Shown here piece after piece: positions 11 through 54,960 of a stretch of DNA of 64,000 nt; position 1 is the first letter of the stretch; every line of letters begins with the position of its first letter. The position numbers and the translations under genes are program-made. The notes beneath the pieces were generated by a model. The model saw nothing but the letters and a program-made list of their open reading frames with translations. It searched no databases and was not told where the DNA came from. Location of the stretch: IMG/VR virus record IMGVR_UViG_3300009093_000034, positions 62,001-126,000 of that record, one strand, 5' to 3'.

Positions 11-199
11 GTGTTTCTTAACATTGCTCTAGGAATTGCTTTCTATGGCGTGGCTGTTCCGTATGCAGTCAATGAGCTTCCAGGAGGCTCTGGTTTCATC
101 TTGGTCGGAGTAGGAATCATCCTACAGCTCTGGATCAACTGGACCATTTTCAAGAAGCCTCTCAAGGCTCTTGGTGAAAAGATTAAGGAGGACTTCTAA
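11..199 (+). CDS. small membrane protein
   Basis: 62-aa ORF with two hydrophobic segments, directly upstream of the SPFH gene. Confidence 0.6.
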   Translation: MFLNIALGIAFYGVAVPYAVNELPGGSGFILVGVGIILQLWINWTIFKKPLKALGEKIKEDF

Positions 200-202
200 A
201 AT

Positions 203-1066
203 ATGAGAAGTTTCAAGTTCATTTCGTTGCTGGCAGTTGTTCTGTTGGCACTGGCAAGCTGTTCTCAGCTCCAGGTTAAGGCAGGTCACGTTGGTATCAT
301 CGTTGACCAGTACGGATCTGGTTCTGGTGTTGAACAGCAGGTCGTAGGTGTAGGTTATCACAGTCTTGGCTGGAATCAGCAAGGATATGACTACCCGATC
401 TATAAGATCCAGTACCAGTTCAAGAACAATGGCAAAGAAGGAGTGGATGAATCGATCCCCTTCCAATCTAAGGAAGGTGTGAAGTGCTCGGCTGATGTGG
501 CCATTCAGGTCCAGGTCGAGAACGATAACAAGTCGATCATCAACTTGTTCACCAGTTACCGAGAGGACATCGAGACCGTCGTCCATACCCAGGTTCATAA
601 TCGACTTCGTGACTACATGGGTCTCTACGCATCCAAGATGACCGTAGATGATCTGTATGGAAACAAGCGCTTTGACATGTTGATTGATGTTACCAAGGCC
701 CTAGCGGACGAGTTCTCCAAGCAAGGTCTGATCATTGACAACCTTAGCTTCTTGGGTGTTGTTGAGTTCCCTGAGACTATCAAGTCTGCCATTGATGCAA
801 AGATGGCTGCTACTCAAAAGGCTCAGCAGAGAGACAACGAGATCGCGACTGCTCAGGCAAGTGCTGCTATCCAGGTCACCCAGGCTAAAGGTGAGGCCGA
901 TTCTAACCGAATCTTGGCTGCTTCGATCAGTCCTGAGATCCTGAAGCTCAAGGAGCTCCAGAACCAAGAGAAGTTCATCGAGGCTCTTTCCACAGGAAAG
1001 GCTACGATGCCTACCACGTATGTGGCAGGTGGTTCTAACTCCCAGACCTTCATTCCTTTGAAGTAA
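203..1066 (+). CDS. SPFH/band-7 (prohibitin-like) membrane protein with lipoprotein-type signal
   Basis: Signal ending LALASC; VKAGHVGIIVD...G start; Ala-rich coiled coil (AIDAKMAATQKAQQ...AKGEADSNRILAASISPEIL) typical of band-7 proteins. Confidence 0.85.
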   Translation: MRSFKFISLLAVVLLALASCSQLQVKAGHVGIIVDQYGSGSGVEQQVVGVGYHSLGWNQQGYDYPIYKIQYQFKNNGKEGVDESIPFQSKEGVKCSADVAIQVQVENDNKSIINLFTSYREDIETVVHTQVHNRLRDYMGLYASKMTVDDLYGNKRFDMLIDVTKALADEFSKQGLIIDNLSFLGVVEFPETIKSAIDAKMAATQKAQQRDNEIATAQASAAIQVTQAKGEADSNRILAASISPEILKLKELQNQEKFIEALSTGKATMPTTYVAGGSNSQTFIPLK

Positions 1067-25120: not shown

Positions 25121-26218
25121 ATGCAGAACCTTCTCGTCCTCAAGTTCATTCAGGAACATCCCAACGATTGGGAGCAGATCCTCTCTGCTGAGCCTTACCA
25201 CATGTCAGTCAAGCACTACGATGGTAAGGAACTCATCAACCAGAACTTGGTGATGCTCTCCTACAACCAGATCTTCTCCGACTTCCACAACCCGATCGTT
25301 CGTGAGTGCCGAGGTATCATCATCGACAAGGTCACCATGAAGGCTGTCTGTGTTCCGTTCTTCAAGTTCGGAAACCAGGGAGAGAGCTATGCTGACAAGA
25401 TCGATTGGTCCACAGCTCATGTTCTCCAGAAGATCGATGGTTCTCTGATCAAGCTCTATTTCTACAATGGAACCTGGCGAATCGCCACCAATGGAACCAT
25501 CAACGCTCTCGAGTGTGATCTTCCTTCGGACCTTGGTCCTTCGAAGACCTTCGGTGAGTTGTTCTTGAACAACATCCCTGTGGACAGCTTCCTCGACATC
25601 GCCGACAAAGACTACACTTACATGTTTGAGATCTGCTCTCCTTGGAACCGGGTGGTAACTCCCTGGCAGACCACCGAGATCTTCTTCTTGGGCATGCGTC
25701 ACAACGAGACCCTTCAGGAAACTCTTCCTGATGACCGGTTCATGCCGATCCTTCCTCCGAAGATGTATCCTCTGACCTCTTTGGCTGAGGTCGAAGCTGC
25801 TTCCAAAGAGCTTCCCTTCCAGGATGAAGGTTATGTCGTCGTTGACGCTGACTTCAAGCGTGTCAAGATCAAGGGTCCGGCTTACGTCAAGATCCACCAT
25901 CTCCGTTCTGAAGGGCCCTTCACCATGAAGCGTGCCTTCGAGTTGGTTCAGGCCAATGAAGTTGGTGAGTTTCTTTCGTACTATCCCGAGTATACTAACG
26001 TTGTAGAAGGTGTTCGTTCCAAATTGGACGTCATCAAGGAAGCTCTGAAGGAACAGGAAACTCTTGTTTTCTCCCAGAACTTCCTTAGCCGAAAGGACTA
26101 CGCTCTCTTTGTCAAGGACTTCCAGTACAAGTCTTACTTCTTCTCGAAGTTGGATGGCAAGGTGTCTGGCATCGACGAGTACGTTTCTAAACTCAAGTTC
26201 GATCAGGTTCAACTGTGA
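25121..26218 (+). CDS. T4 Rnl1-like RNA ligase
   Basis: RECRGIII...PFFKFGN...motif I KIDGSLI...TYMFE...EGYVV...VKIKGPAY. Confidence 0.88.
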   Translation: MQNLLVLKFIQEHPNDWEQILSAEPYHMSVKHYDGKELINQNLVMLSYNQIFSDFHNPIVRECRGIIIDKVTMKAVCVPFFKFGNQGESYADKIDWSTAHVLQKIDGSLIKLYFYNGTWRIATNGTINALECDLPSDLGPSKTFGELFLNNIPVDSFLDIADKDYTYMFEICSPWNRVVTPWQTTEIFFLGMRHNETLQETLPDDRFMPILPPKMYPLTSLAEVEAASKELPFQDEGYVVVDADFKRVKIKGPAYVKIHHLRSEGPFTMKRAFELVQANEVGEFLSYYPEYTNVVEGVRSKLDVIKEALKEQETLVFSQNFLSRKDYALFVKDFQYKSYFFSKLDGKVSGIDEYVSKLKFDQVQL

Positions 26219-28225: not shown

Positions 28226-28269
28226 CCAGAAACGATCTTGCGTTAAAGCAAGGGATCTGAGTCCCAAAG

Positions 28270-28296
28270 AAAAAGCCCTCTTTCGAGGGCTTTTTT
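28270..28296. terminator. bidirectional terminator between convergent genes
   Basis: A5-GCCCTC-TTTC-GAGGGC-T6. Confidence 0.85.
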
Positions 28297-28510
28297 ATTT
28301 TCTGATGATTTGAACTTGTTTACCATCAGGTTTTTCAATCAAGATCTTTGATCCTTTTTGTTCTTGTCTGATCAAGTATTGACAGTACTCAAGATCTTTT
28401 CTAAAGATCTCAGAGACAGCCAAGTTCACACTCTGATTTGATTCTTTAAGTCTTCTCATAAGACTTCGTGGCAAGGTCACGACAACCGTGACCCTATCAG
28501 GATCTTCCAT
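28295..28510 (-). CDS. small ribbon-helix-helix-like protein
   Basis: RVTVVVTLPRSLMRRLKE strand-helix pattern; RBS AGGAGAG. Confidence 0.45.
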   Translation of the reverse strand: MEDPDRVTVVVTLPRSLMRRLKESNQSVNLAVSEIFRKDLEYCQYLIRQEQKGSKILIEKPDGKQVQIIRK

Positions 28511-28521: not shown

Positions 28522-30603
28522 TTATGCAAAAACCAACTCATCTTCAGGCTTGAGAGAGTAAGCGGGTTTGACTCCCTTGGTGGTCTTCACAGGATCAAAG
28601 GTGTTGAACGTGTAGGTTTTTCCTGTGGTTTCATCTAACACCTCGTAAAGAACTGGTAGGTCCAACTCTTTTCCTAGAGCGAAGACGTTGAAGGCAGTGA
28701 GACTGTGAAGGTCTGCTCCCATCTTTGGGTCTGTGTAAACTCCATACAAGGTTCTATCTCTACCAGCATTGTTCAAGCTTGTGTCGATAGCTGCAATTCT
28801 TGCTTGAAGAGAAGCGTAGTCAACCGTGGCCAACAGATAGTCTTCTGTGTTTGGAGACGTGATACATCTCTTAACCAGTTCAGCCAAGTCTCCGTGAGCA
28901 GGGATGTTTTGAAGGTTTGGGTTACTGCATCGGCCTCGGCCAGACTCAGTCAACATGACACCGTAGTTAGGATGCATTCTGAAACTGTTGTCTTCAGGAT
29001 GGTACTTGATGTACTGCTCCCAACCCTTTTCACTATCTTCTGAGCTTGAGATAAACGCCTTGAGGATTGTTTTCAACGATCTGAGCTCTTGAAGTTCTTC
29101 AGCTCCAGCTCTTCCTTTTTGCTTCCAACGTTCTAGACAAGCATCGTCCGTGATGTACAGACCAACCTTGGTTCTACCGAGCTCTTCCCAACCCATGGAC
29201 TCAAAAAGTCGACCTAGAGCATGAGTACTGTTGAAGTCAAAGTCTCTAGTGATGTTCCAAAGTCCAGCCAACTTGGCCTCTAGTCTTTCAACCTCACCAA
29301 GAATTCTTGCTCTTGAACTTTGAAGCTCCGTCTTATTGACGTAGACACCTCGGTACTCTATCTCAGCGAACACTCGGTAAGCTGGCATCATGATCTCGTT
29401 GTAGTAACGTTCCATAGACCATGAAGGATCTTTCTCGTTTGGATATCTTTCATCCAACTCTCTGAGTTGGGACAATTGAGCAAAGTACACTCTGAATGCC
29501 AGGATGGCGTCTTTTGTAGCATAAGGAAAACAAATGTGCTTTGGGATCAACGAGTAGTCTTCAACTCCAGTCTTCTCTTTGTAAAGGTCCAACTCTCTGT
29601 CATACCCTCCGAATGGGGTGTAGTAGTAAGTGGAAGGTTTAAGACCATTGTATCTCTGTTCATTGATGACGTGGCCGAGCTCGACAGTATCCCCGTAAAC
29701 ACAAGCAAAGGGAACTCCCTCTTGCCAAAGCCACTTAACGTCGAACTTGAGGTTAGCACCGATCTGTCTCTTCTTCTTGAGAAGTCTGTTCAGTGTTGGT
29801 TTATCAACTAGATGCCAAGGAACATAGTAACCAGTCTCTCCGTCAAATGAGAACGTAAAACAAACAATTTTGTTTCCAAAGAAACTAAGACTGTTGGTTT
29901 CCAAGTCCCAAGAGAGGAAGGGATATCGATCATCGTCTTCATATCTTTCACAGATCTCAATGAACTCTTCCGTAGTTTGAATATCAACTAGCTTCAGTTC
30001 AGGAATATCAGGAGGAGAGAGATCATAGTCTTGAGCCCAACTGAACTGATACTCAGCGAACCTTGTCTTGTACGTATCAACAGGAAACTCAGGATTTGAT
30101 GGGACATTGTTCTTCCTCATGACTGGAACAAAGATCTCAAGGAAGGAGTCTAGAGGAAAGACCCACGTGTTAGCATCTGGAGACCAAAAGTAAGTCTTAT
30201 TGAAAATGATGTCTCTAAAACAATCGATGGTGATGTCTGCACTTTTGTTGATAGCATAAAGAGCAGAACCTACTGCAAAGATAGCACGAGCACCTTCTGA
30301 GTACTTTTTCCAATTGGTTTGATTTGACCTATAAAACTTAGCCAAACCTCCAGTGATCTCCTCTTTTTTAACGTCTACGTTCAAACTATACAAAATCTTG
30401 AAGCTTCTAATTCCATTCTTGAGAACAAACTTCTCGATCCTCTTAAGTTTCACAGGGGAGTAAAGTTCATCCAATAGAATGACATAAAAAGGTTCGTCTG
30501 GTTGAATATGATCAAGTGCTAATGCATCATGAACCATGTCAGCAGCAAGAACTTTCTTTGTTGCAGATGTGTTAAGTCCACCAAAACTAAAACTAAAACT
30601 CAT
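28522..30603 (-). CDS. polA: family-A DNA polymerase, N-terminal fragment (3'-5' exonuclease plus motif A; motifs B and C absent)
   Basis: Exo I WDLETN, Exo II GANLKFD, Exo III YATKDA; TESGRGRCSNPNLQNIP; motif A VDYASLQARI; DLHSLTA then a ~45-aa tail and stop. Confidence 0.85.
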   Translation of the reverse strand: MSFSFSFGGLNTSATKKVLAADMVHDALALDHIQPDEPFYVILLDELYSPVKLKRIEKFVLKNGIRSFKILYSLNVDVKKEEITGGLAKFYRSNQTNWKKYSEGARAIFAVGSALYAINKSADITIDCFRDIIFNKTYFWSPDANTWVFPLDSFLEIFVPVMRKNNVPSNPEFPVDTYKTRFAEYQFSWAQDYDLSPPDIPELKLVDIQTTEEFIEICERYEDDDRYPFLSWDLETNSLSFFGNKIVCFTFSFDGETGYYVPWHLVDKPTLNRLLKKKRQIGANLKFDVKWLWQEGVPFACVYGDTVELGHVINEQRYNGLKPSTYYYTPFGGYDRELDLYKEKTGVEDYSLIPKHICFPYATKDAILAFRVYFAQLSQLRELDERYPNEKDPSWSMERYYNEIMMPAYRVFAEIEYRGVYVNKTELQSSRARILGEVERLEAKLAGLWNITRDFDFNSTHALGRLFESMGWEELGRTKVGLYITDDACLERWKQKGRAGAEELQELRSLKTILKAFISSSEDSEKGWEQYIKYHPEDNSFRMHPNYGVMLTESGRGRCSNPNLQNIPAHGDLAELVKRCITSPNTEDYLLATVDYASLQARIAAIDTSLNNAGRDRTLYGVYTDPKMGADLHSLTAFNVFALGKELDLPVLYEVLDETTGKTYTFNTFDPVKTTKGVKPAYSLKPEDELVFA

Positions 30604-30841
30604 TATTTTCCTTCTTTATCAAAAGTAATATATAGACTAATGTGCAAATTTACTCACCAATGCAAATAAGAAAAAGTTAATATGGATTCCTAGATTGTTC
30701 ATTTTGAACAGTGTGTAAAATGAGCAGCATATATAAGAATCTAACATAATAAGAATCTTAGTACTTAGGGTCAAACCCGGATCAACAAGAGGTTGATTGG
30801 AGTTCATGAAGTTTTTACTGGACCATGTTATACTTGTTTGT

Positions 30842-32485
30842 ATGGCAAAAGAACTCCGATACTCAAACGATTCCAGACAACGCATGTTCAAGGGAGTTGA
30901 CAAGCTTGCAAAAGCTGTCATGACGACTCTTGGCCCAAGAGGACGAACAGTCATCATTCAAAAGACCTTCGGGTCTCCTTTGATCACAAAGGACGGTGTG
31001 ACCGTCGCTAGAGAAATAGAACTTCCAGATCCTTATGAGAACCTAGGTGCTCAGTTGATCAAGGAAGCTGCGATCAGAACTAATGATCTCGCAGGAGACG
31101 GTACCACAACGGCAACAACGTTGGCCTACTCCTTGATCAATCAAGGTCTTAAGAAGATCTCCGAGGGTTTTGACCCGATTGAGATCAAGAAAGGAATGGA
31201 AGAAGCTACTCTTAGAGCTCAGAAACACCTTCAGTCTTTTAAGATGGATGTTCAGGATACCAAAGACATCAGGCATGTTGCAACCATCTCAGCCAACAAC
31301 GATGCAGAACTTGGTGGCCTTCTGGCTGAAGCCTTTGATCACATTGGAAATGACGGAATTGTGACAGTAGAGGATTCTCCAAATCGACAGACCTTTGTCT
31401 CATATTCCGAAGGACTCGAGTATGATGAAGGATACGCAACTCCGTTCATTATCAACGACCCTAGAGGAATTGTTACTTATCAGAACCCAAGGTTCTTGCT
31501 CATTGATAGTGAGCTGAACAGCTTTCACATCATAGTCAAGATACTCGAGAAGTGGACGAGAGACGGTTGTAAGTATCCTTTCGTCATTGTTGCTACTGGG
31601 TTTTCTAACGAAGTTCTGACGACTATCGGTCAGAATGTTCAAGGTGGAAAAAGACCTATAGCTTGTTTCAAAGCTCCAGGTTTTGGAGAGAAGAAACAGG
31701 TTTACTTGAAGGACTTGGCTGCTGCTTTGGGAGCATCCATCTTTACACAACAAGAGGTTGGTCTTCAACTAGCTCAGTTCCAAGAAGAACACCTTGGAAA
31801 AGCTGGTTCCTTGAAGCTTACCTCAAACAGAACAACCATCGTTGATCCTAAGGGAGACGGAGAGGCATTTGAAAAACATGTTCAAGAACTTAGAGAGATG
31901 GAAGCAGAGTCTACTTCAGGCTTTGAAAAAGAACTTCTCCAAGAGCGACTCGCTAAACTCGCTGGTGGAGTTGCTGTGGTTCACGTTGGTGCTTCAACCG
32001 AAGTTGAACTCAAGGAAAAGAAACACAGGGTTGAAGACGCTCTGAATGCAACTAGAGCTGCTCTAGAAGAAGGTATTGTCATCGGTGGAGGAAACACACT
32101 CCTTAGAGTGGCAAAGCTTCTTTCTCAAAACATCAAGAACCTTGGATCACCAGGTTTTATGGCTGGTTACAACGCAGTGGTAAGAGGTCTTAGAGAACCA
32201 TTCTATCAGATCGCTTATAACGCTGGAAAGTCTCTAGAAGATATCGTCGAAGCCGTTCCAATCATTACCAAGACTGGAAGCACCAACATGGGTTGGAACG
32301 CTTTGACTGATACCTTTGGAGACCTATATGAAGAGGGAGTTATCGACCCCATCAAGGTCACTCGATATGCCTTAGAACACGCAGCTTCTGTTGCTGCTAT
32401 CTTCATGGTGGTTGAGTGTGCTATCATCGATCAAGGAAACATCCGTGTCGTACCTAATGGCTCGGAGTTAATGGGAGAATTCTAA
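30842..32485 (+). CDS. groEL: chaperonin GroEL (phage-encoded)
   Basis: MAKELRY...TLGPRGR...TKDGVTVAREI...AGDGTTTAT...ERLAKLAGGVAV...GGG; start set at MAKE. Confidence 0.97.
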   Translation: MAKELRYSNDSRQRMFKGVDKLAKAVMTTLGPRGRTVIIQKTFGSPLITKDGVTVAREIELPDPYENLGAQLIKEAAIRTNDLAGDGTTTATTLAYSLINQGLKKISEGFDPIEIKKGMEEATLRAQKHLQSFKMDVQDTKDIRHVATISANNDAELGGLLAEAFDHIGNDGIVTVEDSPNRQTFVSYSEGLEYDEGYATPFIINDPRGIVTYQNPRFLLIDSELNSFHIIVKILEKWTRDGCKYPFVIVATGFSNEVLTTIGQNVQGGKRPIACFKAPGFGEKKQVYLKDLAAALGASIFTQQEVGLQLAQFQEEHLGKAGSLKLTSNRTTIVDPKGDGEAFEKHVQELREMEAESTSGFEKELLQERLAKLAGGVAVVHVGASTEVELKEKKHRVEDALNATRAALEEGIVIGGGNTLLRVAKLLSQNIKNLGSPGFMAGYNAVVRGLREPFYQIAYNAGKSLEDIVEAVPIITKTGSTNMGWNALTDTFGDLYEEGVIDPIKVTRYALEHAASVAAIFMVVECAIIDQGNIRVVPNGSELMGEF

Positions 32486-32486: not shown

Positions 32487-32768
32487 ATGGCAAAAGACGT
32501 GATTGAGACTAGAGGTCTCTTTCAAGTAAGAATCACACCTACCCTCAAGTGGCCGTTCAAGACCATGCCTATTTTTTATGATTCTAGGCACGTGTTCTTG
32601 AACACCAAAGACGCTGAGGCTTATAAGCCCTCCTTTGTTGAAGCGGCCATCGAGGCCGGGTTGATCATTGAACCCAATGACAAACAAAAGAAAAAGGGAA
32701 TTGAGACCTTCACTGTCACGGTGATTCCTCTAGAACTTGTAATCAGAGAAGGATCTTTGAAGTCATGA
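32487..32768 (+). CDS. hypothetical protein (not GroES-like)
   Basis: No GroES PLxDRV or mobile-loop motif. Confidence 0.55.
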   Translation: MAKDVIETRGLFQVRITPTLKWPFKTMPIFYDSRHVFLNTKDAEAYKPSFVEAAIEAGLIIEPNDKQKKKGIETFTVTVIPLELVIREGSLKS

Positions 32769-33959: not shown

Positions 33960-34637
33960 ATGTCCCAAGATAACATTCTCTCTCAAGATGAGATTGATGA
34001 ACTTCTAACAGCCATATCTGTTGGAGGTTATGAAGATCAGGATTCTACAGAGCCTCCTTTTAGAGACATGTATGGTGATAAACATAAGAGGATCAAGATC
34101 TATGACTTCAAGAGACCTGACGTTCTAACTAAGGAACAAATCAGGATCCTAAGTAAGATCCATGAGCAAGCTTCAAGAGAGCTTCAGAAAACTCTTGCCC
34201 AGAGTTTTGATACTGAGGTCTTTAGGATCGCAGTAGCATCAGTAGACCAACTTCAGTACGAAGAATACACTAGAAGTATTAACAACCCGTCCCTAAACTA
34301 TTTCTTTGACGTCAATGATCTTGTTACCAATGTATCGTTGGAACTAGATCTCAAGTTCATCACAAAGTTCATAGTTAGAAGTATGGATGGCATAGCCAAA
34401 GATAAGTTCATTGACTACAATGAACATCACATCATTCGTGATGATGAATACGCTGAGTTTATTAAAGACAGAGACGTTGTATTAAAAGTTGTGAACCAAA
34501 TTTGGGAAACTCTTGATGTCCATTGGAACACATCTCTAGGAAGATCTAGAGATGATCAAGATCCTTCTTCTAACAAAGTCCAAATCGATGCAAACCCTCA
34601 GTTTCTTACTAACCTCTCTCTCCTGAAGAGATGTTAG
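33960..34637 (+). CDS. fliM: FliM-like protein, N-terminal and middle domains (frameshifted at a CT tract)
   Basis: ILSQDEIDELLTAIS (CheY-P binding), IKIYDFKRPD..TKEQIR, VASVDQLQYEEYTRSI, IDANPQF. Confidence 0.88.
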   Translation: MSQDNILSQDEIDELLTAISVGGYEDQDSTEPPFRDMYGDKHKRIKIYDFKRPDVLTKEQIRILSKIHEQASRELQKTLAQSFDTEVFRIAVASVDQLQYEEYTRSINNPSLNYFFDVNDLVTNVSLELDLKFITKFIVRSMDGIAKDKFIDYNEHHIIRDDEYAEFIKDRDVVLKVVNQIWETLDVHWNTSLGRSRDDQDPSSNKVQIDANPQFLTNLSLLKRC

Positions 34638-46096: not shown

Positions 46097-46169
46097 GCTG
46101 ACATAGCTCCAATGGTAGAGCACAACCATGGTAAGGTTGTTGTTCCCGGTTCGAGTCCGGGTGTCAGCT
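46097..46169 (+). tRNA. tRNA-Thr(GGT)
   Basis: Full cloverleaf; CAACC-ATGGTAA-GGTTG; TTCGAGT T loop. Confidence 0.9.
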
Positions 46170-46170
46170 C

Positions 46171-46563
46171 TTGAAAAAGAGAAATGGTACTTGCATCCAA
46201 TGTGGAGAACCACTACATGCAGGTGATAAATACTGTAGTAGTACTTGTCAAAATCGATTCCAAACTAAAACTTTGATTTTGAATTGGTTAAACTACGGTT
46301 TACCTAAGAAATATGCCAGTCCCCGTAGAGGACTGGCTTTACCTACCTATGTTTCTTCTTATATTAAAGAACAACAACACGATTGTTGTTCTCTCTGTAA
46401 TAGAGAAGCAATTTGGGAAAATAAACCACTCAATATGGTTTTAGACCATATTGACGGAGATGCATCAAATAATCTAAGATCTAATCTTAGATTAATTTGT
46501 CCAAACTGTAACTCTCAAACTTCTACTTTTTCAGGTAGAAATAGAGGAAACGGTAAAAGATAA
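46171..46563 (+). mobile_element. free-standing HNH endonuclease between tRNA genes
   Basis: LDHIDGDASNNLRSNLRLICPNCNSQT; locally AT-richer; wedged between tRNA-Thr and tRNA-Ala. Confidence 0.8.
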
Positions 46564-46636
46564 GGGGCCTTAGTGACATCGGTAGCACACCTCTATGGCA
46601 TGGAGGAAGGGCGGGTTCGACTCTCCGCAGGTTCCA
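46564..46636 (+). tRNA. tRNA-Ala(GGC)
   Basis: GGGGCCT acceptor; CCTCT-ATGGCAT-GGAGG. Confidence 0.8.
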
Positions 46637-46652
46637 GTGTTTAAGTTTTATT

Positions 46653-46724
46653 GGGCCGTTCGTTCAACGGATAGGACAGGATACTTCTAATATTCTAATG
46701 TGGGTTCGATTCCTGCACGGCTCG
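46653..46724 (+). tRNA. tRNA-Arg(TCT)
   Basis: GGATA-CTTCTAA-TATTC; TTCGATT. Confidence 0.85.
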
Positions 46725-46738
46725 TAGAAGGTATAAAA

Positions 46739-47194
46739 ATGATCAAGAATGTGGCCATGATCTTCATGGCAGCTGTTTTGTTCTCTTGTACTCCAGAGGT
46801 AAAAGTTGAGGTCGTTCCTAGTCCTCAGCCTACTCTGACTCAGGCAGAAGTGACTGCTGAACCTCAGCATCTTCATGTTGATCTTCTCGGTGTTCACACT
46901 GTGAAGCCCAAGGATACTCTTTGGGGTATCAGTGGACTTTGGTACAACGACTACGTTTTGTGGCCGGCTATCTACCAAATCAACAAGGGTCAGATCAAAG
47001 ATCCGGACCTGATCTACACTGGTCAGAAGTTCGATATTCCTAAGCTTTCTGGTACCGATCTTTCTACTTTGTCCGATGGTGATAAGTCCCTTCTTTCTGA
47101 AGGTTACTTGGAAGCCTATCGTGTCTACAAAGACAAGGGTCGTGCCGACGCTGAAGACTATCACAAGTCTGGTGAAGACTTGATCAACAAGTAA
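46739..47194 (+). CDS. LysM-domain lipoprotein
   Basis: Lipobox VLFSC; HTVKPKDTLWGIS...WPAIYQINKGQIKDPDLIYTGQKFDIP. Confidence 0.88.
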   Translation: MIKNVAMIFMAAVLFSCTPEVKVEVVPSPQPTLTQAEVTAEPQHLHVDLLGVHTVKPKDTLWGISGLWYNDYVLWPAIYQINKGQIKDPDLIYTGQKFDIPKLSGTDLSTLSDGDKSLLSEGYLEAYRVYKDKGRADAEDYHKSGEDLINK

Positions 47195-47573
47195 TCAAGT
47201 CTAAGGAAAGGAAAATGACCTTTGCTGTTGGAGCAATTTGTTTAGGGATCGGTTTGATCCTTGGAGTAGCTTTGAGAAAAAGTCCTAAGAAGGATTACGA
47301 AGCTGTTCCAGAACCAGGTTCAGAATGGCTGTAATTCCTGATGATGCTTTCGTCTCATGGATGGATAAGGAAGGAGTTTGGTACTGTACCACCAAGGATT
47401 CACATCTGGTAGGTTCAGGACCTAGCATGCTTCATGCTAGACTTTCTTACTTAGAACTTTTGAAAAACGAGAATAGTTAAGTCGAGGCGGCTGCCCTAAA
47501 GTCGGAGAAATAACGCGTGTCCAGTTCGAAGCGCTCCGCACCTTACACTGGAGAGGGTAACTATTCTTTATAC

Positions 47574-47656
47574 GCACTTGTGGCGGAACGGTATACGCGC
47601 TAGTTTGAGGTACTAGTGGGCGCAAGCTCGTGAGGGTTCAAATCCCTCCAAGTGCA
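47574..47656 (+). tRNA. tRNA-Leu(GAG), canonical type II
   Basis: CTAGT-TTGAGGT-ACTAG; variable arm GGGC-GCAA-GCTC. Confidence 0.92.
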
Positions 47657-47668
47657 TAAGGTAAGAAA

Positions 47669-48779
47669 ATGAAACACTTGTTTTGTAAGATCTTTCACAA
47701 GCCTACGTTTGTGAAACAGTGGGAGAGCGAAGGTAAAAAGCATTTAGATGCTTGGCCTTATAATCCTCTTGTTCTTCATCCAGATCTGAGTTACAACTTC
47801 CTTCATTTCATGTGTCCAAAGTGCAAGGAAGAATGGGACGAGTTCAAAGGCGATCCTTTCCCAAGGGTTCTTCGTCCGAGATATTATAGAAAAAGTGAGA
47901 CCGACACTACAGATACAATCTGGAGTTAAGTCTAAAACATGGTGGAGTTGCCAGAGAGGTTATTGGCCCTGACTGTGAATCAGGTGGTCGCGGGTTCGAG
48001 TCCCGTACTTCACCCTTTCTTAGGAGCATCAAATGCTGGTTAATCCGTTGATCTCTGTTCCGTGCAAACATTGCCAACAGACTACTACGATCAACGTCAA
48101 GTCTATCTCAAGTCTAAACACAGAGAATGAAAGACTCCAGCGAGAGTTAGATGAAGCCAACAAGAAGATCAAGTTGTTAGAACTTGCTGCTGGTTGGGGA
48201 AAGTCAGACTCAGGTGGCTTTGATGGTATGTTTGGAGATCTCTTCTCTACAAAGAAGAGAAACGAATATTGATGAAAGTAAAACTTCCATCTAGAGGACG
48301 AGGTCTCTTTAGAGAAGAGTACTATTCAATTTGCTCAGCTCACCAAGAGTTCAATCAAGAGTGTTCTACTTGCAAGATTGGTTCTTGGCATAATGTGTGG
48401 TTAGGTGTTGCTAATAGCGTTCTTTTCAAAGTTTGGCCAGCTCTTTGGATCTGGAATGCCAATCGTCCAAAGAACAAAACCAAGTGGCTCAAGTCCATCA
48501 ACGCTAAGAATAATTTCCCAAATCTAAGGTAAGAAAATGAAATTCTCAATTTTGGTCTTGTCATTCTGTCTTCTAACTGGTTGTAGCGCTGCTTACAATG
48601 GCGGAATGAACAACAGCTATTCTCCTTCCCTGTTTTCAATCCCAGAAGGATTGGAGTACGGAAAAGAAGTGGGAAAGAACTGGTTCGAAGGAACCTACAA
48701 AGGTGACAAGGTTTTGATCCATCAGACCGTTTCATACGGTGGATATTGGGAAGTTACCTTTATGTACGTGAAGAAGTAA
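47669..48779 (+). CDS. small hypothetical proteins (47669-47929, 48033-48272, 48269-48532, 48537-48779 lipoprotein)
   Basis: ORF track; the last has lipobox LLTGC. Confidence 0.55.
47941..48015 (+). tRNA. tRNA-His(GTG)
   Basis: CCTGA-CTGTGAA-TCAGG; C73. Confidence 0.88.
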
Positions 48780-48796
48780 GATCGTATATTAGATGA

Positions 48797-49408
48797 ATGC
48801 CTCAATTCACCGACGACCAAACCTTCTTACTGAAAAAGTCCTTTGAAAAGTTCTTGAAGAACTCAACTGGAAAGTTCGTTGTTTTTGACCTTGAGACAAA
48901 CGGTTTTCATGGTTCTAGTGTTCTTTCCATCTCAGCACAAAAGTGCCTCTTTGTAAGAGGAAAGAAAGTCTCTGTTCTTGGGGACTACAATCGTTTCTAC
49001 TTTCCTGTAGAGAAGTTCAATTGGCAGGCCATCAAGATCAACGGTCTTGGAAGAACTGCAGTGACAGCAAAAAGAGGTTCAGCTACTTACGCTCAGAACT
49101 TTATCGACGACATTACTGCCTTCAAACGATGGTGTGAAGGAATCGAACACTTTGTAGGTCACAACATCATCAAGTTCGATTGTGAGTTCTTTCCAAAGGA
49201 CTTCAAGTTCACACACGTGTTTGACACCATGTTAGAAACTGTGGAACTTTGTAAGATATTGAGAGATGACGGTAAGAACAAGTTCCCTAAGTTGAGGGAA
49301 GCCGCAGAGTTCTTTGAGATTGATATTTCTGAGGGAATTCTTCACACGTCTAGTTTTGACGTAGATGTGACCACTCAACTGTTTGAGAAATTGTACTCAC
49401 TAACTTAA
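48797..49408 (+). CDS. DEDDh 3'-5' exonuclease (DnaQ-like)
   Basis: VVFDLETNG...VGHNIIKFD...DTM...PKLREAAE...HTSSFDV. Confidence 0.9.
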   Translation: MPQFTDDQTFLLKKSFEKFLKNSTGKFVVFDLETNGFHGSSVLSISAQKCLFVRGKKVSVLGDYNRFYFPVEKFNWQAIKINGLGRTAVTAKRGSATYAQNFIDDITAFKRWCEGIEHFVGHNIIKFDCEFFPKDFKFTHVFDTMLETVELCKILRDDGKNKFPKLREAAEFFEIDISEGILHTSSFDVDVTTQLFEKLYSLT

Positions 49409-49581
49409 GGAGTGATCGTGACTGCAAGTATCATTTTCTTGTGTATCTTTTTTGCAGTAGCCGTTTTTTGGCTTGGTTACACTGTTGGTTGGTCGTCTAA
49501 CGATAACTCATTCAACAAACAAATGCGTCGACGAAGACAAATTGATATCCAGAACACCATTGAGAGTTTTGGAAGAACTAC

Positions 49582-49662
49582 GCGGAAGTGACCTCAGAGC
49601 GAATGGCACAGCTCGGAGTCTTAAACACTTTGGTTTTGGGGGTTCGAGTCCCCTCTTCCGTA
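49582..49662 (+). tRNA. atypical tRNA-Leu(TAA) with extra helix and no variable arm
   Basis: Acceptor GCGGAAG/CTTCCGT+A; D loop GAATGGCACA; loop CTTAAAC. Confidence 0.8.
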
Positions 49663-49817
49663 GAAAGGTAGAGTCAAACCTTGAGGGTTAAATTCTTCAA
49701 AATGACGAAGGTTGATTTCAGCAACCACCTAATGCACAGGTCTTGGGATAAACGTGGCGCGACGATTATACCTGGGAACAGGGTAGCCCCGATGAAAAGG
49801 GACTGAATGTGCTACAT

Positions 49818-49889
49818 GCTTCCATCGACTAGCGGCTAGGTCGACTCCCTCTCAAGGAGTAAACGCGGGTTCGATTCCCGCTGGAAGTA
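49818..49889 (+). tRNA. tRNA-Glu(CTC)
   Basis: ACTCC-CTCTCAA-GGAGT. Confidence 0.9.
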
Positions 49890-49894
49890 TACAC

Positions 49895-49967
49895 GCTCTA
49901 GTCGTCTACTGGATAGGATGCCTGACTTTCAATCAGGAAGACGTGGGTTCGAATCCCACCTAGAGTA
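49895..49967 (+). tRNA. tRNA-Glu(TTC)
   Basis: CCTGA-CTTTCAA-TCAGG. Confidence 0.9.
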
Positions 49968-49973
49968 TACATA

Positions 49974-50060
49974 GGCTCGGTGGCAGAATAGTTATGCAGC
50001 GGTCTGCAAAACCGTATAGGTTTGAAAGAACCTAAGTGGGTGCAAGTCCCATCTGGGCCT
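49974..50060 (+). tRNA. tRNA-Cys(GCA) with a long variable arm
   Basis: GCGGT-CTGCAAA-ACCGT; extra hairpin TAGGTT-TGAAAG-AACCTA; U73. Confidence 0.8.
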
Positions 50061-50371
50061 CTAGGTTTGATAGAAGGGAAGCATAAGACTTCTGTATTGA
50101 GAACCTTACAAAGGAGAGTGGTGCGTATACGCGTATCGCTAATATCGTAGAGAAGGAAGTCCAATGTTTTGGTCAGCCTTCGACCTACATCACGGTCTTT
50201 GTAGATGAGAATGGTCAAGAGATTGAGCATATTGAGTCTAGAGAGATTGAAGAGTTTGAATACCGTCTTGAGGAGCAACTTTTGCTTCTTAGGATCACCC
50301 AGGAAGAACGCGAACGCCAGTTGATAAAGACTGAAGCGTTCTTCAAGGACCTTCAACAGGTCGGGTAATAG

Positions 50372-50445
50372 GCTGATGTGCATCGACTAGTAAAGTGGCC
50401 GCTCTCATAAGGCGGATTATGTGGGAGCGTTACCCACCATCAGCA
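50372..50445 (+). tRNA. tRNA-Met/Ile2(CAT), variant T loop
   Basis: GCTGATG/CATCAGC; CCGCT-CTCATAA-GGCGG; T loop AGCGTTA. Confidence 0.75.
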
Positions 50446-50534
50446 TCCCTAAAGAAAAGTCAACTGTCCCTGGCCGCGAGTTGTCGTGAGACTTCCGCAT
50501 GCCCACCATAGTTGACTTTTCTTTTTAGAAAGGA

Positions 50535-50849
50535 ATGAAAATGAAGAAATTTCTTTTGGCTGCTCTTGTAGCCATGCTTTTGTTCTCTTGTACGGGAGAG
50601 TTCAAAGAAACTGACATTGCCCCACAGTGGGCTCACAGTTCATCAACGAACTATGTTTTTACTGAACTTACCAACTACGATCGTTACAACTTTCGTGTGT
50701 ACAATTGGGTCTTGACTCCTATGAATGGTAAGGTCAAGCAGGATGCTGTTCTCTATCTTGAGAAACTTTATCCTGGAGACTCTGTTTACAACGAGAGTGA
50801 TTCTTTGATCGTGATCTCTGAAATGAAACCTATTCCGATAACCAAGTAA
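50535..50849 (+). CDS. lipoprotein
   Basis: MKKFLLAALVAMLLFSC lipobox. Confidence 0.7.
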   Translation: MKMKKFLLAALVAMLLFSCTGEFKETDIAPQWAHSSSTNYVFTELTNYDRYNFRVYNWVLTPMNGKVKQDAVLYLEKLYPGDSVYNESDSLIVISEMKPIPITK

Positions 50850-51141
50850 AAGAAACGTGTGAAAAGACTTATGGCGTCGGGAGATACACCACAACCTATG
50901 ACTACTGGAAGCGTGACCTAGAGCACGTAGCCGCCCCAAAAGAATAAAGGCAGTATCTGTCAACTACAGAGGCGGACTCAGAAGGTAGCAATGGAACTTC
51001 TAAACGACAGGTAAGATGGATAAAGGCCCTGTTTTGGAAGACAGACGGAATAATTGGCCGTCAACTTCGGTGAAAGAGATCCAGGTAAATAACCGAGGAA
51101 AAGAAGTGTGAAAAAGTTCCCCACATGTTTATATTTGAATC

Positions 51142-51441
51142 ATGAGTAAGTACTTAGTTCTTAAGGAACAACTAGAAACTATTGGGACAGGTGAGATGAC
51201 CTGTTTTGGAAATTCTATGACCCCAATTTTATCTAGTGGTTCCAGATTACTCTTTCAAAAATGTGATGACTACGAAGTTGGAGACATCGTCTTTTGTAAG
51301 ATCAAAGGACGATTCATAGATGCTCACTTGGTCACTAAGAAAGACAAAGGTTCTAAGAGATGGATGATCTCTAACAATCATGGCCATGAAAATGGTTGGA
51401 CTCATACGATCTATGGTAAGGTCGTGAAGGTGCTTAGTTAA
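51142..51441 (+). CDS. S24/S26 peptidase-like protein
   Basis: GNSMTPIL...EVGDIVFCK...AHLV. Confidence 0.7.
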   Translation: MSKYLVLKEQLETIGTGEMTCFGNSMTPILSSGSRLLFQKCDDYEVGDIVFCKIKGRFIDAHLVTKKDKGSKRWMISNNHGHENGWTHTIYGKVVKVLS

Positions 51442-51442
51442 A

Positions 51443-51981
51443 ATGGTTACTGTCTACATGTCCAAAGAAGACGAACAAATTCTAAAAGATCTCAATGAAA
51501 ACGTTGATCTAGCTACACAGGTTAGAGAAGATTTCTTAGACAAGATGCTTTTGAAGTACTCAAAGTTCAAAGACAGAGATAGGATGTATTTTGAAAATGG
51601 ACGAGTTGAAAAGTTTGAGTCTGTTCGTAGAAATAAAGATAATCCCAGGCATCTTGAACTCACATACTACTACATGAGGACAGGAAACCACGATTATCCT
51701 CTTGGTGAGGAACCAATCAAAGATCAACTCTACACCAAACAAGAACTGATTGAGAGATTGACATCCCATCTAGAGTCTCTTAAGCGATGACTCTATCTTG
51801 GCATCTTACTGATGAACAGGTTCAAAAACTAGTGGAATGGAAGAAAACTCTTTCTCCAGAACCGAGGACTGCTATAGGTGGAGCTTTTACCTATAGTTTC
51901 ACTGATACGTCTATCGGAACCGTGATCAAGGTTAAGTACTGGGATGGTCAAGAGATTGATCTCACAGACTATGATTTTTAG
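51443..51981 (+). CDS. two hypothetical proteins (51443-51790, 51787-51981)
   Basis: Coupled ORFs. Confidence 0.55.
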
Positions 51982-51996
51982 TTACTAATTTTATAC

Positions 51997-52072
51997 GCGT
52001 CGGAAACGGAGCTGGTGGCAGCCGCGCGAGCTTATATCTCGCTGTAGGAGAGTTCGATTCTCTCACGACGTA
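51997..52072 (+). tRNA. tRNA-Ile(TAT)
   Basis: GCGAG-CTTATAT-CTCGC; TTCGATT. Confidence 0.78.
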
Positions 52073-52193
52073 GAAAACAAGAAGGCCTTCACGGCGGACC
52101 AGGTCGCTCCTGGTTTGGTTTATGATCTTCGTCAGTACTGAAACGACACCGGAAAAGCTGACGAAATCTTTCTTGTGATTTTACTAACTCTCT

Positions 52194-52826
52194 ATGACAA
52201 GAGACAACGCTCGACACATGGTTTTGTCCATAGCAAATAGTATGGGGATAAAGCTCTCTTCTGAAGAGGAAGAGAAGCACATCAATGATGTCATAAAGAG
52301 CACAGATGAGTGGTTAGAGAATAATGGTCCAGATCTTCCAGAAGAGGAGATCTCAGACGAAGATGCTTTTCCCATCACTGATGTTTCTAGCGATGAGAGA
52401 AAGGTCTTGAACAGCTATAGAAACTATGGTTATGAGACTATCAATAAGTTCTTGAGGTTCGGAAACTCTGAGTCTTTGTCTCAACACAAAGACATGATTG
52501 AGTTTCGAATAGCTACGATCGATGACGTCATAGAAAGGAATCATTCCTTATCTGACGGAGTGGTCTATAGAATTGTTGAAGATGAAGGTTTTCTAAAAAG
52601 TTCGTTCACTGAACCAGCTTTTTTATCAACTTCATTTGATCACAGTTATATTGATTCACAGACGGAGAACTATGAGAACCCAGAGATTCTGGTGATTCAT
52701 GTTCCAAAAGGAACTCCGTACGCAAGAGTGGCAGAACATGCCATGGATGATTTTGAAGGTGAGGTTCTTCTTCCAAGAGGAGGAACCTTGACAAAGCAAG
52801 GAGATCATTGGAACTTTTCTTGCTAA
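52194..52826 (+). CDS. ADP-ribosyltransferase (Alt/VIP2-like, R-S-E clade)
   Basis: YRNYGYETINKFLR...VVYR...FLSTS...EGEVLLPRG. Confidence 0.9.
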   Translation: MTRDNARHMVLSIANSMGIKLSSEEEEKHINDVIKSTDEWLENNGPDLPEEEISDEDAFPITDVSSDERKVLNSYRNYGYETINKFLRFGNSESLSQHKDMIEFRIATIDDVIERNHSLSDGVVYRIVEDEGFLKSSFTEPAFLSTSFDHSYIDSQTENYENPEILVIHVPKGTPYARVAEHAMDDFEGEVLLPRGGTLTKQGDHWNFSC

Positions 52827-52869
52827 AAAGTTTTCAAAAGGATAAGATCGTGAGATATTATTCTTTACA

Positions 52870-53066
52870 AGGGCTTGTACAGTTTCGACGGCTGTTGTAA
52901 TAAGGTTCAACGAAATGCCCATGCACCCGAACGAACCTGTTCCCTTTAAACAAGGGACGTATAGCAAGCCGGACCCGATGTCAAAGTCGGCAGGTCCATT
53001 GGGATAAGGGTTCCCCGCATGACCGTACCGGGGAGTAAGAGCAAAGGTCATAAATCATGACACCCT
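52870..53066 (+). ncRNA. tmRNA-like structured RNA with no recognisable tmRNA 3' end
   Basis: Begins GGGCTTGTACAGTTTCGACGG just after a TGAGATATT promoter; hairpins and two possible pseudoknots. Confidence 0.4.
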
Positions 53067-53080
53067 GTATCTTTTATTCT

Positions 53081-53152
<72 letters not shown>

Positions 53153-53171
53153 TCTCTTTTATACTCTCACT

Positions 53172-53248
53172 ACCGAGTGAGCTCAGCTGGTTGCTGAGAC
53201 CCGTCTGATAAGCGGTTACAGGACGTGTTCGATTCACTCCACTCGGAT
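53172..53248 (+). tRNA. tRNA-Ile(GAT)
   Basis: CCCGT-CTGATAA-GCGGT; imperfect T stem. Confidence 0.65.
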
Positions 53249-53276
53249 AACTCGCGTTGGTGCTATGACTTACTTC

Positions 53277-53352
53277 GGAAAATTCGCCTAGCTGGTCAAG
53301 GCAAAATCATTTGAGATTTCTATCGCTGGTTCAACTCCAGCATTTTTCACCA
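53277..53352 (+). tRNA. degenerate tRNA-Gln-like (TTG in a 6-nt loop), encoded CCA
   Basis: GGAAAAT/ATTTTTC-A-CCA; AAATC-ATTTGA-GATTT. Confidence 0.55.
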
Positions 53353-53483
53353 CAAAACAGTTGTGGCAGAAGTTACCGAGTTACTTTGAATCAAACCAAC
53401 CAGTTCCCACGGTTAAGTAGTTGATTCCTGGAAACTTTTGAAAAAAAGTTTTCAAAAACCAAAAGCTTTGAGATATTAAATAA

Positions 53484-54050: not shown

Positions 54051-54052
54051 GG

Positions 54053-54147
54053 AACCATCTAGTGTAACGGTGGCACACCGCCTGACGATAGGTCGTAGAG
54101 ACTGACAATAAGGGGGCAGATTGAGGTTCAACTCCTCTCGATGGAAT
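54053..54147 (+). tRNA. tRNA-like element with an expanded anticodon arm
   Basis: D arm TAGTGTAACGGTGGCAC, T loop TTCAACT, CCATC/GATGG acceptor; ~20 extra nt in the anticodon region. Confidence 0.45.
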
Positions 54148-54956: not shown

Positions 54957-54960
54957 TTTT

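What the first reader, a model, noticed from the sequence alone, without database searches (positions are those of the whole stretch)
28522..28660. Split family-A DNA polymerase whose N-half ends in a Hint/intein-like stub lacking catalytic residues
Seen: the gene stops ~50 aa after DLHSLTA, before motifs B and C; the next gene is unrelated, so the C-half is not adjacent. The tail YEVLDETTGKTYTFNTFDPVKTTKGVKPAYSLKPEDELVFA follows the spacing of N-intein strands (V.EI...G..I..T.DH.F.T..GW..A..L..GD.I), but has no preceding Cys/Ser block A and no block-B His. Established: phage polymerases can be fractured and rejoined by split inteins. Inference: a non-splicing Hint-derived module may hold two polymerase halves together non-covalently.
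Basis: partly seen in the sequence, partly recalled or inferred. Interest (0 to 1): 0.68.

Follow-up and report, generated by a model that had tools for sequence, protein, structure and literature searches.

The report
Split polymerase zipped by intein remnant
A 306-kb soil phage encodes its only DNA polymerase as two distant genes whose broken ends carry a shrunken, chemically dead remnant of a split intein that probably docks the halves without splicing; the same remnant sits on other broken phage replication genes.

Summary
The gene at 28522-30603 (-) encodes 693 aa: a 3'-5' exonuclease domain plus the first half of a family-A polymerase. It stops 56 aa after DLHSLTA.

The missing half (318 aa, motifs B and C, own Shine-Dalgarno site and TTG start) lies 206 kb away, or 96 kb across the ends of the record. 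About 35 metagenomic relatives are split at the same residue. One 989-aa relative is unsplit but nests inside the split clade, so it is a secondary re-fusion.

A profile of the ~50-aa tail hits the NrdJ-1 split intein in the PDB (E 1.4e-4). In 1.84 billion proteins it hits 63 true split-intein N-pieces, aligned from block B to their C-terminal ends. Three fold searches return almost only Hint domains.

Block A, the TxxH of block B, and blocks F and G are absent, so splicing is excluded. The acidic tail and the basic, conserved 13-aa head of the C-half are predicted to touch (complex score 0.78, best control 0.00). Whether the pair is needed for assembly is inferred, not shown.

Similar dead tails end split Rnl1, UvsW, PolB, DnaE and RNR genes.

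The parts
28522..30603 (-). N-half of the split family-A DNA polymerase (693 aa, protein P0001), stop codon included. Its partner, the C-half (318 aa, TTG start), lies outside the window at G000:C1:298926-299882 (+) = L003:1453-2409.
   Evidence: ORF list. Pfam PF01612 and PF00476 HMM 3-197/381. C-half found by PF00476 HMM 192-358.
29485..29982 (-). 3'-5' exonuclease domain (residues 208-373).
   Evidence: Pfam PF01612, E 1.9e-6.
28675..29328 (-). Thumb, palm motif A and first fingers helices of the polymerase domain (residues 426-643). Includes the invariant motif-A Asp595 and DLHSLTA (631-637).
   Evidence: Pfam PF00476. Alignment to Taq and Klenow structures. Invariant columns of the family alignment.
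28525..28674 (-). Hint-remnant tail (residues 644-693). It is homologous to the C-terminal ~40 residues of a split-intein N-piece, from block B to the split point. It lacks block A and the Thr/His of block B.
   Evidence: Profile hits to NrdJ-1 and to 63 true N-inteins. Collinear alignment. Fold of this very tail, pLDDT 77.6: 25 of 28 chains with Z>=2 are Hint domains.
28522..28524 (-). TAA stop codon at the conserved break point, which corresponds to the natural split site of split inteins.
   Evidence: Sequence. All N-halves end 0-6 residues after the D-x-L motif. 56 of 63 matched true N-inteins end within 8 residues of the same aligned column.

Best explanation
The phage makes its only DNA polymerase from two separately translated polypeptides. 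The N-half carries the exonuclease, thumb, palm motif A and the first fingers helices. The C-half carries the O-helix (motif B) and motif C, and is encoded 96 to 206 kb away.

The break lies in the fingers, between helix N and helix O. At that point both ends carry leftovers of a phage-type split intein. The N-half ends in about 45 residues that correspond to an N-intein from just before block B to its natural C-terminus. The C-half starts with about 13 basic residues that take the place of the first strand of a C-intein.

Everything needed for splicing has been lost: the block A nucleophile, TxxH, block F, the block G His-Asn and the +1 nucleophile. The halves therefore stay separate proteins.

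The acidic tail and the basic head most likely form one small five-stranded sheet, the central part of a Hint fold. This would capture and register the two halves while the palm sheet and fingers helices dock into a normal Pol I fold.

Shown: the split, the homology, the absence of catalytic residues and the conservation. Inferred: that the remnant contributes to assembly.
For: **Split and completeness.** The two halves cover HMM positions 3-197 and 192-358. Motifs B and C are invariant in the C-half family. No PolB or Pol III alpha is detected in the genome.

**Independent translation.** AAGGAG precedes the TTG start, and a conserved 'MLKI' start is seen in all C-halves. No intron-like RNA lies near either half.

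**Age.** About 35 N-halves and about 30 C-halves exist, down to 36-41% identity. They co-occur on contigs of 274, 292 and 306 kb.

**Re-fusion.** The unsplit P0032 nests with the split P0035/P0036 (SH-aLRT 100) inside a split clade (99). It carries tail and head contiguously.

**Homology to inteins.**
- NrdJ-1 intein: E 1.4e-4 and 1.3e-3, aligned over TPDH...DDDELV.
- 126 hits at E<=1e-3 in 1.84e9 proteins; 63 have T/S..H at the block B columns, and 56 of those 63 end within 8 residues of the match end.
- Pfam confirms Intein_splicing/Hint on these hits.

**Fold.**
- Module model, pLDDT 84: about 23 of 30 chains with Z>=2 are Hint domains, best Z 4.3 (53 residues aligned, rmsd 3.5 A).
- ESM Atlas best match is a PT-HINT cluster, TM 0.76, rmsd 1.7 A over 57 residues.
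- Window tail model: best Z 4.9 (49 residues aligned, rmsd 4.0 A). The alignment ends near the last residues of the Npu DnaE, gp41-1 and NrdJ-1 N-pieces.

**Contact.** Complex ipSAE 0.78 against a best control of 0.00. That mark was reached by 58 of 80 solved complexes and 2 of 110 mismatched pairs. The runs agree in at least 88% of contacts and the partner pLDDT is at least 70. Tail residues 640-659 and 682-690 and head residues 1-17 are in the interface.

**Constraint.** Tail columns are 42-44% identical and head columns 59%, against 36% and 45% for the whole proteins. Net charge is -4.5 for tails and +4.4 for heads.
Against: - Pfam intein and Hint models do not see the tail at E<=10. The window's own tail as a single sequence hits nothing in the PDB.
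- The structural Z-scores are low (at most 4.9). Foldseek gives no E<=0.001. The models come from AlphaFold2, which may lean on the same sequence signal.
- The head is too short for any statistical test of homology.
- The complex prediction may simply recall the single-chain Pol I fold. Its lowest-error contacts are palm and fingers, not tail and head.
- In the one tested precedent, Aeh1 NrdA, the tails were not needed for heterodimer formation (PMC3045599).
- No intact intein was found at this site in any family-A polymerase, so the ancestor is inferred.
- The re-fused relative still keeps the module. This could mean the module has a role other than tethering.
Confidence: 0.7

Rival explanations
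1. The tail and head are only an evolutionary scar of a lost split intein. They have no role in assembly, and the large polymerase interface alone holds the halves together.
For: About 370 predicted contacts, with the most confident ones in the palm sheet and fingers helices. Aeh1 NrdA fragments heterodimerise without their tails (PMC3045599).
Against: Tail and head are more conserved than the rest of their proteins across about 35 lineages. Their opposite charges are kept. Similar tails persist on several other split genes. A useless 60-residue appendage would be expected to erode.
Confidence: 0.17
2. The ~60-residue module is an ordinary lineage-specific insertion in the fingers, for example a DNA- or partner-binding hairpin. 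Its likeness to Hint is convergent or a modelling artefact, and the gene happened to break beside it.
For: The unsplit relative carries it as an internal insertion. Z-scores are low and Foldseek E-values are not significant. Pfam sees nothing.
Against: Profile hits to true split N-inteins reach E 7.7e-8 after correction for 1.84e9 proteins. They are aligned collinearly up to the very C-terminus of those proteins. There is an independent PDB hit to NrdJ-1. The unsplit form is derived, not ancestral.
Confidence: 0.07
3. It is an unusual but active trans-splicing split intein, or the halves are joined by RNA splicing or DNA rearrangement. In either case a single polypeptide is made.
For: Phage replication genes are often fractured by true split inteins (PMC2677866). 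The break coincides with the natural split site.
Against: There is no Cys or His in the tail. The columns of the block B Thr and His hold Leu/Phe and Glu/Gln. The head is 13 residues with no block F or G and no conserved Asn plus Cys/Ser/Thr. No intron family lies near either half. No joints appear in contigs (contigs only, so weak evidence). The re-fused relative keeps the module in the mature protein.
Confidence: 0.03
4. The gene is a pseudogene or a misassembly.
For: None beyond the truncated appearance.
Against: The break point is conserved in about 35 relatives, and both halves sit on the same long contigs. Contigs from three studies agree over the stretches they cover. It is the only polymerase in a complete 306-kb genome.
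Confidence: 0.01

Closest known systems
Natural split inteins of phage 'fractured genes' (NrdJ-1, gp41-1, IMPDH-1 class; Dassa et al. 2009, PMC2677866; PDB 8ubs, 6riz)
   Same: The tail matches the N-intein from block B to its end, with 33% identity to NrdJ-1 over 51 structurally aligned residues. The polypeptide stops at the natural split site. The N piece is acidic and the C piece basic. The host is a phage replication enzyme.
   Different: Only about 45 + 13 residues remain of about 105 + 40. Block A, TxxH and blocks F and G are absent, so no splicing is possible. The halves are 96-206 kb apart with no homing endonuclease between them.
Assembly tails of the mobE-split NrdA-a/NrdA-b of Aeromonas phage Aeh1 (Crona et al. 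2011, PMC3045599)
   Same: An essential replication-related enzyme is split inside its catalytic core. [quoted passage not shown] The authors speculated that the tails are remnants of a degenerate split intein and that such tails may be general.
   Different: No homology to inteins was shown there. Those tails drive dimer-of-heterodimer assembly rather than heterodimer formation, and the genes are adjacent around mobE. Here homology to inteins is statistically supported, but function is untested.
Other split DNA polymerases: T4-like gp43A/B, Methanothermobacter PolB1/B2, Nanoarchaeum PolB and cyanobacterial DnaE with active split inteins, and clade-B T7-like cyanophage PolA (exonuclease and polymerase as separate ORFs; PMC12695635)
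   Same: A replicative polymerase is assembled from two gene products.
   Different: The cyanophage family-A split lies at the exonuclease/polymerase domain boundary. The Nanoarchaeum PolB and cyanobacterial DnaE cases splice. None is described with a truncated, non-splicing Hint remnant inside the fingers of a family-A enzyme.
Domesticated, non-splicing Hint domains (yeast HO endonuclease, bacterial intein-like domains, Hedgehog Hint)
   Same: Hint-derived sequence retained by the host for a purpose other than canonical protein splicing.
   Different: Those keep a complete Hint fold, and most keep some cleavage chemistry. This one is a central fragment shared between two polypeptides.

Membership tests
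Family A DNA polymerase (Pfam PF00476 with PF01612) | 3'-5' exonuclease domain and palm motif A with the catalytic Asp | tested here: met
   PF01612 E 1.9e-6 and PF00476 E 1.8e-19. Asp595 is invariant in 35 sequences.
Family A DNA polymerase (Pfam PF00476 with PF01612) | Motif B (O-helix R..K..F...Y/F-G) and motif C (H-D-E/S) | tested here: met
   Absent from the window gene. Present and invariant in the separate C-half (R32, K36, F40, F44; H211, D212).
Family A DNA polymerase (Pfam PF00476 with PF01612) | Catalytic core on one polypeptide | tested here: not met
   Two genes 206 kb apart, each with its own start and stop.
Intein (self-splicing Hint domain) | Block A with an N-terminal Cys/Ser nucleophile | tested here: not met
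   The tail starts inside the region that follows block A. There is no Cys in the tail and no room for the first ~50 intein residues.
Intein (self-splicing Hint domain) | Block B TxxH | tested here: not met
   The aligned columns hold Leu/Phe and Glu/Gln in the polymerases, against T/S..H in 63 true N-inteins.
Intein (self-splicing Hint domain) | Blocks F and G with terminal His-Asn and a +1 Cys/Ser/Thr | tested here: not met
   The C-half head is 13 residues and runs straight into the polymerase helix. There is no conserved Asn-Cys/Ser/Thr. Compare the true C-inteins in L018.
Hint superfamily (homology and fold) | Significant sequence similarity to Hint domains | tested here: met
   E 1.4e-4 to NrdJ-1 in the PDB. 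E 7.7e-8 to 1e-3 to Pfam-confirmed N-inteins in 1.84e9 proteins.
Hint superfamily (homology and fold) | Complete Hint fold of about 130-150 residues | tested here: not met
   Only about 55-60 residues, which align to the central part (about residues 40-125) of mini-inteins.
Naturally split intein | N piece ends and C piece begins at the canonical split / endonuclease-insertion site | tested here: met
   Tail ends align with the ends of true N-inteins. The fused module spans the endonuclease insertion of PI-PfuI, chain range 40..428.
Naturally split intein | Protein trans-splicing of the two products | not testable with these tools
   No experiment was possible. The residue pattern argues against it (rows above).
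Fractured gene arrangement (Dassa 2009) | The two halves are adjacent and separated by a free-standing homing endonuclease gene | tested here: not met
   The halves are 96/206 kb apart here and about 100/193 kb apart in a 292-kb relative. The arrangement is met by the UvsW example in L015.
Aeh1 NrdA-type assembly tails | Tails at the break are required for activity | not testable with these tools
   Only indirect evidence: conservation, charge complementarity and predicted contact.

The most novel reading that the evidence does not exclude
The polymerase pair is one member of a widespread and so far undescribed class of non-splicing 'zipper' cassettes derived from split inteins: an acidic tail of about 40 residues plus a basic head of about 13. 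These cassettes would let homing endonucleases or rearrangements break essential phage replication genes (PolA, PolB, DnaE, UvsW, Rnl1, RNR) without any need for protein splicing. They may spread as units. In this lineage the pair works well enough that the halves have drifted 100-200 kb apart.
Probability: 0.4. Interest if true: 0.88.

Novelty: new variant of a known kind. Interest (0 to 1): 0.78.

Why it matters
It gives the first sequence- and fold-level support I could find for an idea raised only as speculation in 2011: that the tails on fragmented phage genes are decayed split inteins reused as protein-protein docking pieces.

It shows one possible end state of intein evolution. The splicing chemistry is lost, while the 'capture' part of the split-intein interface is kept and fixed in the host enzyme.

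It makes several questions directly testable:
- Can a polymerase active site be rebuilt from two chains joined only by a Hint fragment?
- How far can a Hint fold be trimmed and still pair?
- Are such pairs orthogonal between genes?

Short natural heterodimerising tags that do not splice would also be useful tools.

For annotation, truncated-looking polymerase, helicase, ligase and reductase genes with this tail should be read as halves of working enzymes, not as pseudogenes.

Tried and rejected
**Searches that found nothing or were uninformative**
- Pfam on ten tails at E<=10: no Hint or intein family.
- Pfam intein and Hint_2 models on the whole genome: nothing.
- The window's tail as a single sequence against the PDB: nothing.
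- Profile of the C-half head against the PDB, and against ORFs of three loci: not significant, because the head is too short.
- Protein-atlas feature search on the module: only weak polymerase fragments.
- Foldseek on both models: no E<=0.001, although inteins dominate the lists.
- Tail profile on all six frames of the genome: no second copy.
- Rfam on the window and the C-half locus: tRNAs only, no intron.
- Five literature searches (of ten allowed): no description of this module.

**Leads that proved false or limited**
- tblastn alignments of T5-like polymerases seemed to reach into the tail. Pairwise comparison showed a spurious extension onto their motif B; T5-like enzymes have no insertion here.
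- A first alignment mixing tails and heads was misaligned and was discarded.
- Cultured phages hold no close relative; the best is about 25% identity. Viral-contig pattern scans found only one distant locus and one near-identical locus.
- Long metagenome contigs could not be searched as genomes, so co-occurrence was shown through exact-protein look-ups instead.
- Read laying used contigs only. It cannot exclude rare rearranged molecules, and no RNA run was on record among the listed holders.

- The large profile search was used because the family scans left the tail open and the claim involved absence of intact-intein relatives.
- No alternative genetic code was used.
- Read laying was given 3,401 letters.
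Full report
**1. What is in the window**

The finding lies at the 3' end of a minus-strand ORF, 28522..30603, of 693 aa. Pfam finds a 3'-5' exonuclease domain over residues 208-373 and a family-A polymerase domain over residues 426-643. The polymerase match covers only HMM positions 3-197 of 381.

DLHSLTA is residues 631-637. The downstream 71-aa gene is unrelated.

The window is bases 62001-126000 of a 305,833-bp viral record. Its ends repeat 123 bp and it is judged complete. Run metadata point to rhizosphere and soil metagenomes.

A 24-kb contig from the probable source run spans the gene end without a difference. Contigs from two other studies cover parts of it with no joint; only the soil one reaches the stop codon. 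These are contigs only, so rare rearranged forms cannot be excluded.

**2. The other half**

A six-frame search of the whole genome with PF00476 finds one more place, at 298,926-299,882 (+). It matches HMM positions 192-358. The ORF is 318 aa. It starts at a TTG eight bases after AAGGAG and carries motif B and motif C.

The public gene call of 291 aa starts too late. All relatives begin with a conserved 'MLKIxKxTVxRxIT' that matches the TTG start.

The halves are 206 kb apart, or 96 kb across the record's ends, and lie on opposite strands. No family-B or Pol III alpha polymerase is detectable. This split enzyme is therefore presumably the replicase.

**3. A conserved, old split**

A word search returned about 37 relatives of the N-half at 36-73% identity. 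Nearly all are 684-749 aa and end at the same aligned position. A second search returned about 30 free-standing C-halves of 266-311 aa.

N- and C-halves co-occur on contigs of 292 kb and 274 kb. In the 292-kb contig they are about 193 kb apart, or about 100 kb if the genome is circular.

One relative, P0032 (989 aa, on two contigs), is unsplit. It carries the tail, then the head, then motif B in one frame.

In a tree rooted with bacterial Pol I, P0032 groups with the split P0035 and P0036 (SH-aLRT 100). That group lies inside a split clade (99), and the basal branches are also split. The tree left out three short fragments and the aberrant P0038. The parsimonious reading is one secondary re-fusion. 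This also shows that the two broken ends lie next to each other in the assembled enzyme.

**4. What the tail is**

Compared with Taq, Klenow and T5-like enzymes, the family has an insertion of about 55-60 residues between fingers helix N and the O-helix. In split members the break falls inside this insertion.

Standard tools see nothing in it. A profile of 30 tails, however, hits one PDB sequence significantly: the NrdJ-1 split intein (E 1.4e-4; next hit 0.19). The alignment runs over 'VKTIRCTPDHPVYTKNRGYVRADELTDDDELV', that is from block B onward. A broader 39-tail profile repeats the hit at E 1.3e-3.

The same profile was run against 1.84 billion representative proteins and gave 126 hits at E<=1e-3. 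My tally is:

| Class | Count | Note |
|---|---|---|
| True N-inteins with T/S..H at the block B columns | 63 | 56 end within 8 residues of the match end |
| Polymerase N-halves | 24 | this family |
| Dead tails in other sequence contexts | 34 | some are polymerase fragments |
| Repeat proteins | 5 | unrelated |

Pfam confirms Intein_splicing, PT-HINT and Hint at the C-termini of the tested members of the first class. Their hosts are ribonucleotide reductases and a SAM synthetase, and their E-values reach 7.7e-8. A joint alignment is collinear up to the last residues.

**5. Fold**

AlphaFold2 models were made of two pieces.

- *Fused module (P0032:656-714).* The model has pLDDT 84, with four strands, a short helix and a final long strand that corresponds to the C-half head.
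  - An aligner run over 48,161 representative chains gave 30 chains with Z>=2, about 23 of them inteins or Hedgehog Hint. The best was PI-PfuI: Z 4.3, 53 residues aligned, rmsd 3.5 A. The matched ranges span the endonuclease insertion site.
  - In the ESM Atlas search all ten rows carry Hint or inteins. The best is a PT-HINT cluster with TM 0.76 and rmsd 1.7 A over 57 residues.
- *The window's own tail.* The model has pLDDT 77.6.
  - 25 of 28 chains with Z>=2 are Hint domains. The best is the MchDnaB-1 intein: Z 4.9, 49 residues aligned, rmsd 4.0 A.
  - The alignments end near the ends of natural N-pieces: Npu DnaE N-chain 46..97 of 101, gp41-1 37..87, and NrdJ-1 52..107 with 33% identity.

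Foldseek E-values are not significant, although inteins dominate its lists.

Both models may draw on the same sequence signal, so I count the fold as supporting evidence, not independent proof.

**6. Why it cannot splice**

- The tail has no Cys or His.
- The block B Thr and His columns hold Leu/Phe and Glu/Gln.
- There is no room for the first ~50 intein residues, because the preceding sequence aligns to polymerase helices.
- The head is 13 residues and runs directly into the helix before motif B. It has no block F or G and no conserved Asn plus nucleophile.

True C-inteins on a fractured reductase contig begin in a similar way ('MLKITRIQVPE...', 'MKTKKITAIRY...') but continue to '...VVVHN|C'. 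The likeness of the head to that first strand rests on position, charge and the fold model. It is too short to test statistically.

**7. How it probably works**

A complex prediction used N-half residues 400-693 and the C-half.
- ipSAE was 0.78, against 0.00 for the best of three controls.
- The mark was reached by 58 of 80 solved complexes and 2 of 110 mismatched pairs.
- The runs agree in at least 88% of contacts, and the partner pLDDT is at least 70.
- My own alignments were used, so the calibration counts hold only roughly.

The most confident contacts rebuild the palm sheet (motif A strand with motif C hairpin) and the fingers helices. Tail residues 640-659 and 682-690 and head residues 1-17 are also in the interface. 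Because Pol I is a known single-chain fold, this pass may be recall rather than evidence of binding.

Independent hints of function:
- Tail and head columns are more conserved (42-44% and 59%) than their proteins overall (36% and 45%).
- Tails are acidic (mean -4.5; this one -2) and heads are basic (mean +4.4; this one +4). This echoes the electrostatic pairing described for split inteins (PMC2677866).

[quoted passage not shown] These are exactly the segments retained in this polymerase.

**8. A wider pattern**

The tail profile also ends the N-pieces of other split genes that have no Pfam Hint hit: Rnl1-type RNA ligases, UvsW helicases, a family-B polymerase and DnaE. A reductase (P0175) carries the same dead tail at its C-terminus but also holds a separate Pfam-detected intein further upstream.
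- On a T4-like contig, UvsW is cut into three pieces by two endonuclease-like genes. Its first piece ends '...DLRSDDELV', and the later pieces start with the basic heads 'MKIKSIEKIQL...' and 'MKPTKIEKTVAD...'.
- A split RNA ligase has the tail, and its partner begins 'MAKINKITKKSKI...'.

This suggests a class of dead split-intein remnants on fractured phage genes. I did not establish whether they arose once or many times.

**9. Comparison with what is known**

Split inteins in fractured phage genes are known (PMC2677866). So are split polymerases of other kinds (PMC12695635, PMC7824862, PMC6892783).

The closest precedent is the Aeh1 NrdA case. There the tails at the break are essential for activity, and the authors speculated that they might be remnants of a degenerate split intein and might be general (PMC3045599).

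I found no paper showing such homology, and none describing this family-A polymerase family. The library does not include most subscription journals.

I therefore rate this as a new variant of a known kind. It is not an intein by membership, because the catalytic features were tested and not met. It is Hint-derived, and it plausibly works like the association step of a split intein.

**10. Limits**

Everything is computational. The need for the module in assembly, the timing of expression of the two genes and the host are all unknown.

Noticed in passing
window 46097-59496 (+): A cluster of 28 tRNA genes, all on the plus strand (Rfam gathering threshold).
   Followed up: no
window 33960-34637 (+): A phage-encoded protein matching the N-terminal half of the flagellar switch protein FliM (PF02154, E 8.5e-15, HMM 1-99 of 192). 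This is unusual for a phage.
   Followed up: no
window 30797-32485 (+) and 32487-32768 (+): A GroEL-type chaperonin (PF00118, E 2e-66) is transcribed divergently from the polymerase N-half. It is followed by a 93-aa ORF without a Pfam hit that could be a co-chaperonin.
   Followed up: no
window 25121-26218 (+): An intact Rnl1-type RNA ligase (PF09511). In other phages the same family is found split and carrying the same dead intein tail (P0186, P0203, P0206).
   Followed up: partly
L003:1-2409 (G000:C1:297474-299882) versus L007, L008, L009, L014: In relatives the N-half sits divergently beside the DnaG-type primase and a ~160-aa gene. In this genome the C-half occupies that place and the N-half sits beside the chaperonin. 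The two halves are also on opposite strands here, but on the same strand in the 292-kb relative. This points to a rearrangement.
   Followed up: partly
L015:4001-7339: On a T4-like contig, UvsW helicase is cut into three ORFs by two homing-endonuclease-like genes. The first piece ends in the dead intein tail (35.6 bits). The second ends in a weak tail-like sequence (7 bits). The second and third pieces begin with basic heads.
   Followed up: partly
L018:2073-8013: A ribonucleotide reductase is fractured into four pieces by true split inteins and two large intervening ORFs. It was useful as a reference for intact N- and C-intein ends.
   Followed up: partly
P0038 (718 aa, relative of the N-half): This relative departs from the family exactly at motif A and continues with about 120 residues of unrelated sequence. 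It could be another kind of break, an insertion or a chimeric contig. It was left out of the tree.
   Followed up: no
L003:1453-1533 (G000:C1:298926-299006): The public gene call for the C-half (P0121, 291 aa) starts at an internal ATG. It misses the conserved 27-residue N-terminus, which includes the head. The true start is a TTG with a strong Shine-Dalgarno site.
   Followed up: yes
window 28266-28303: A ~35-bp stretch just downstream of the 71-aa gene recurs in many unrelated contigs of four metagenomes with loose ends on both sides. It is probably a short repeat or a terminator-like element.
   Followed up: no
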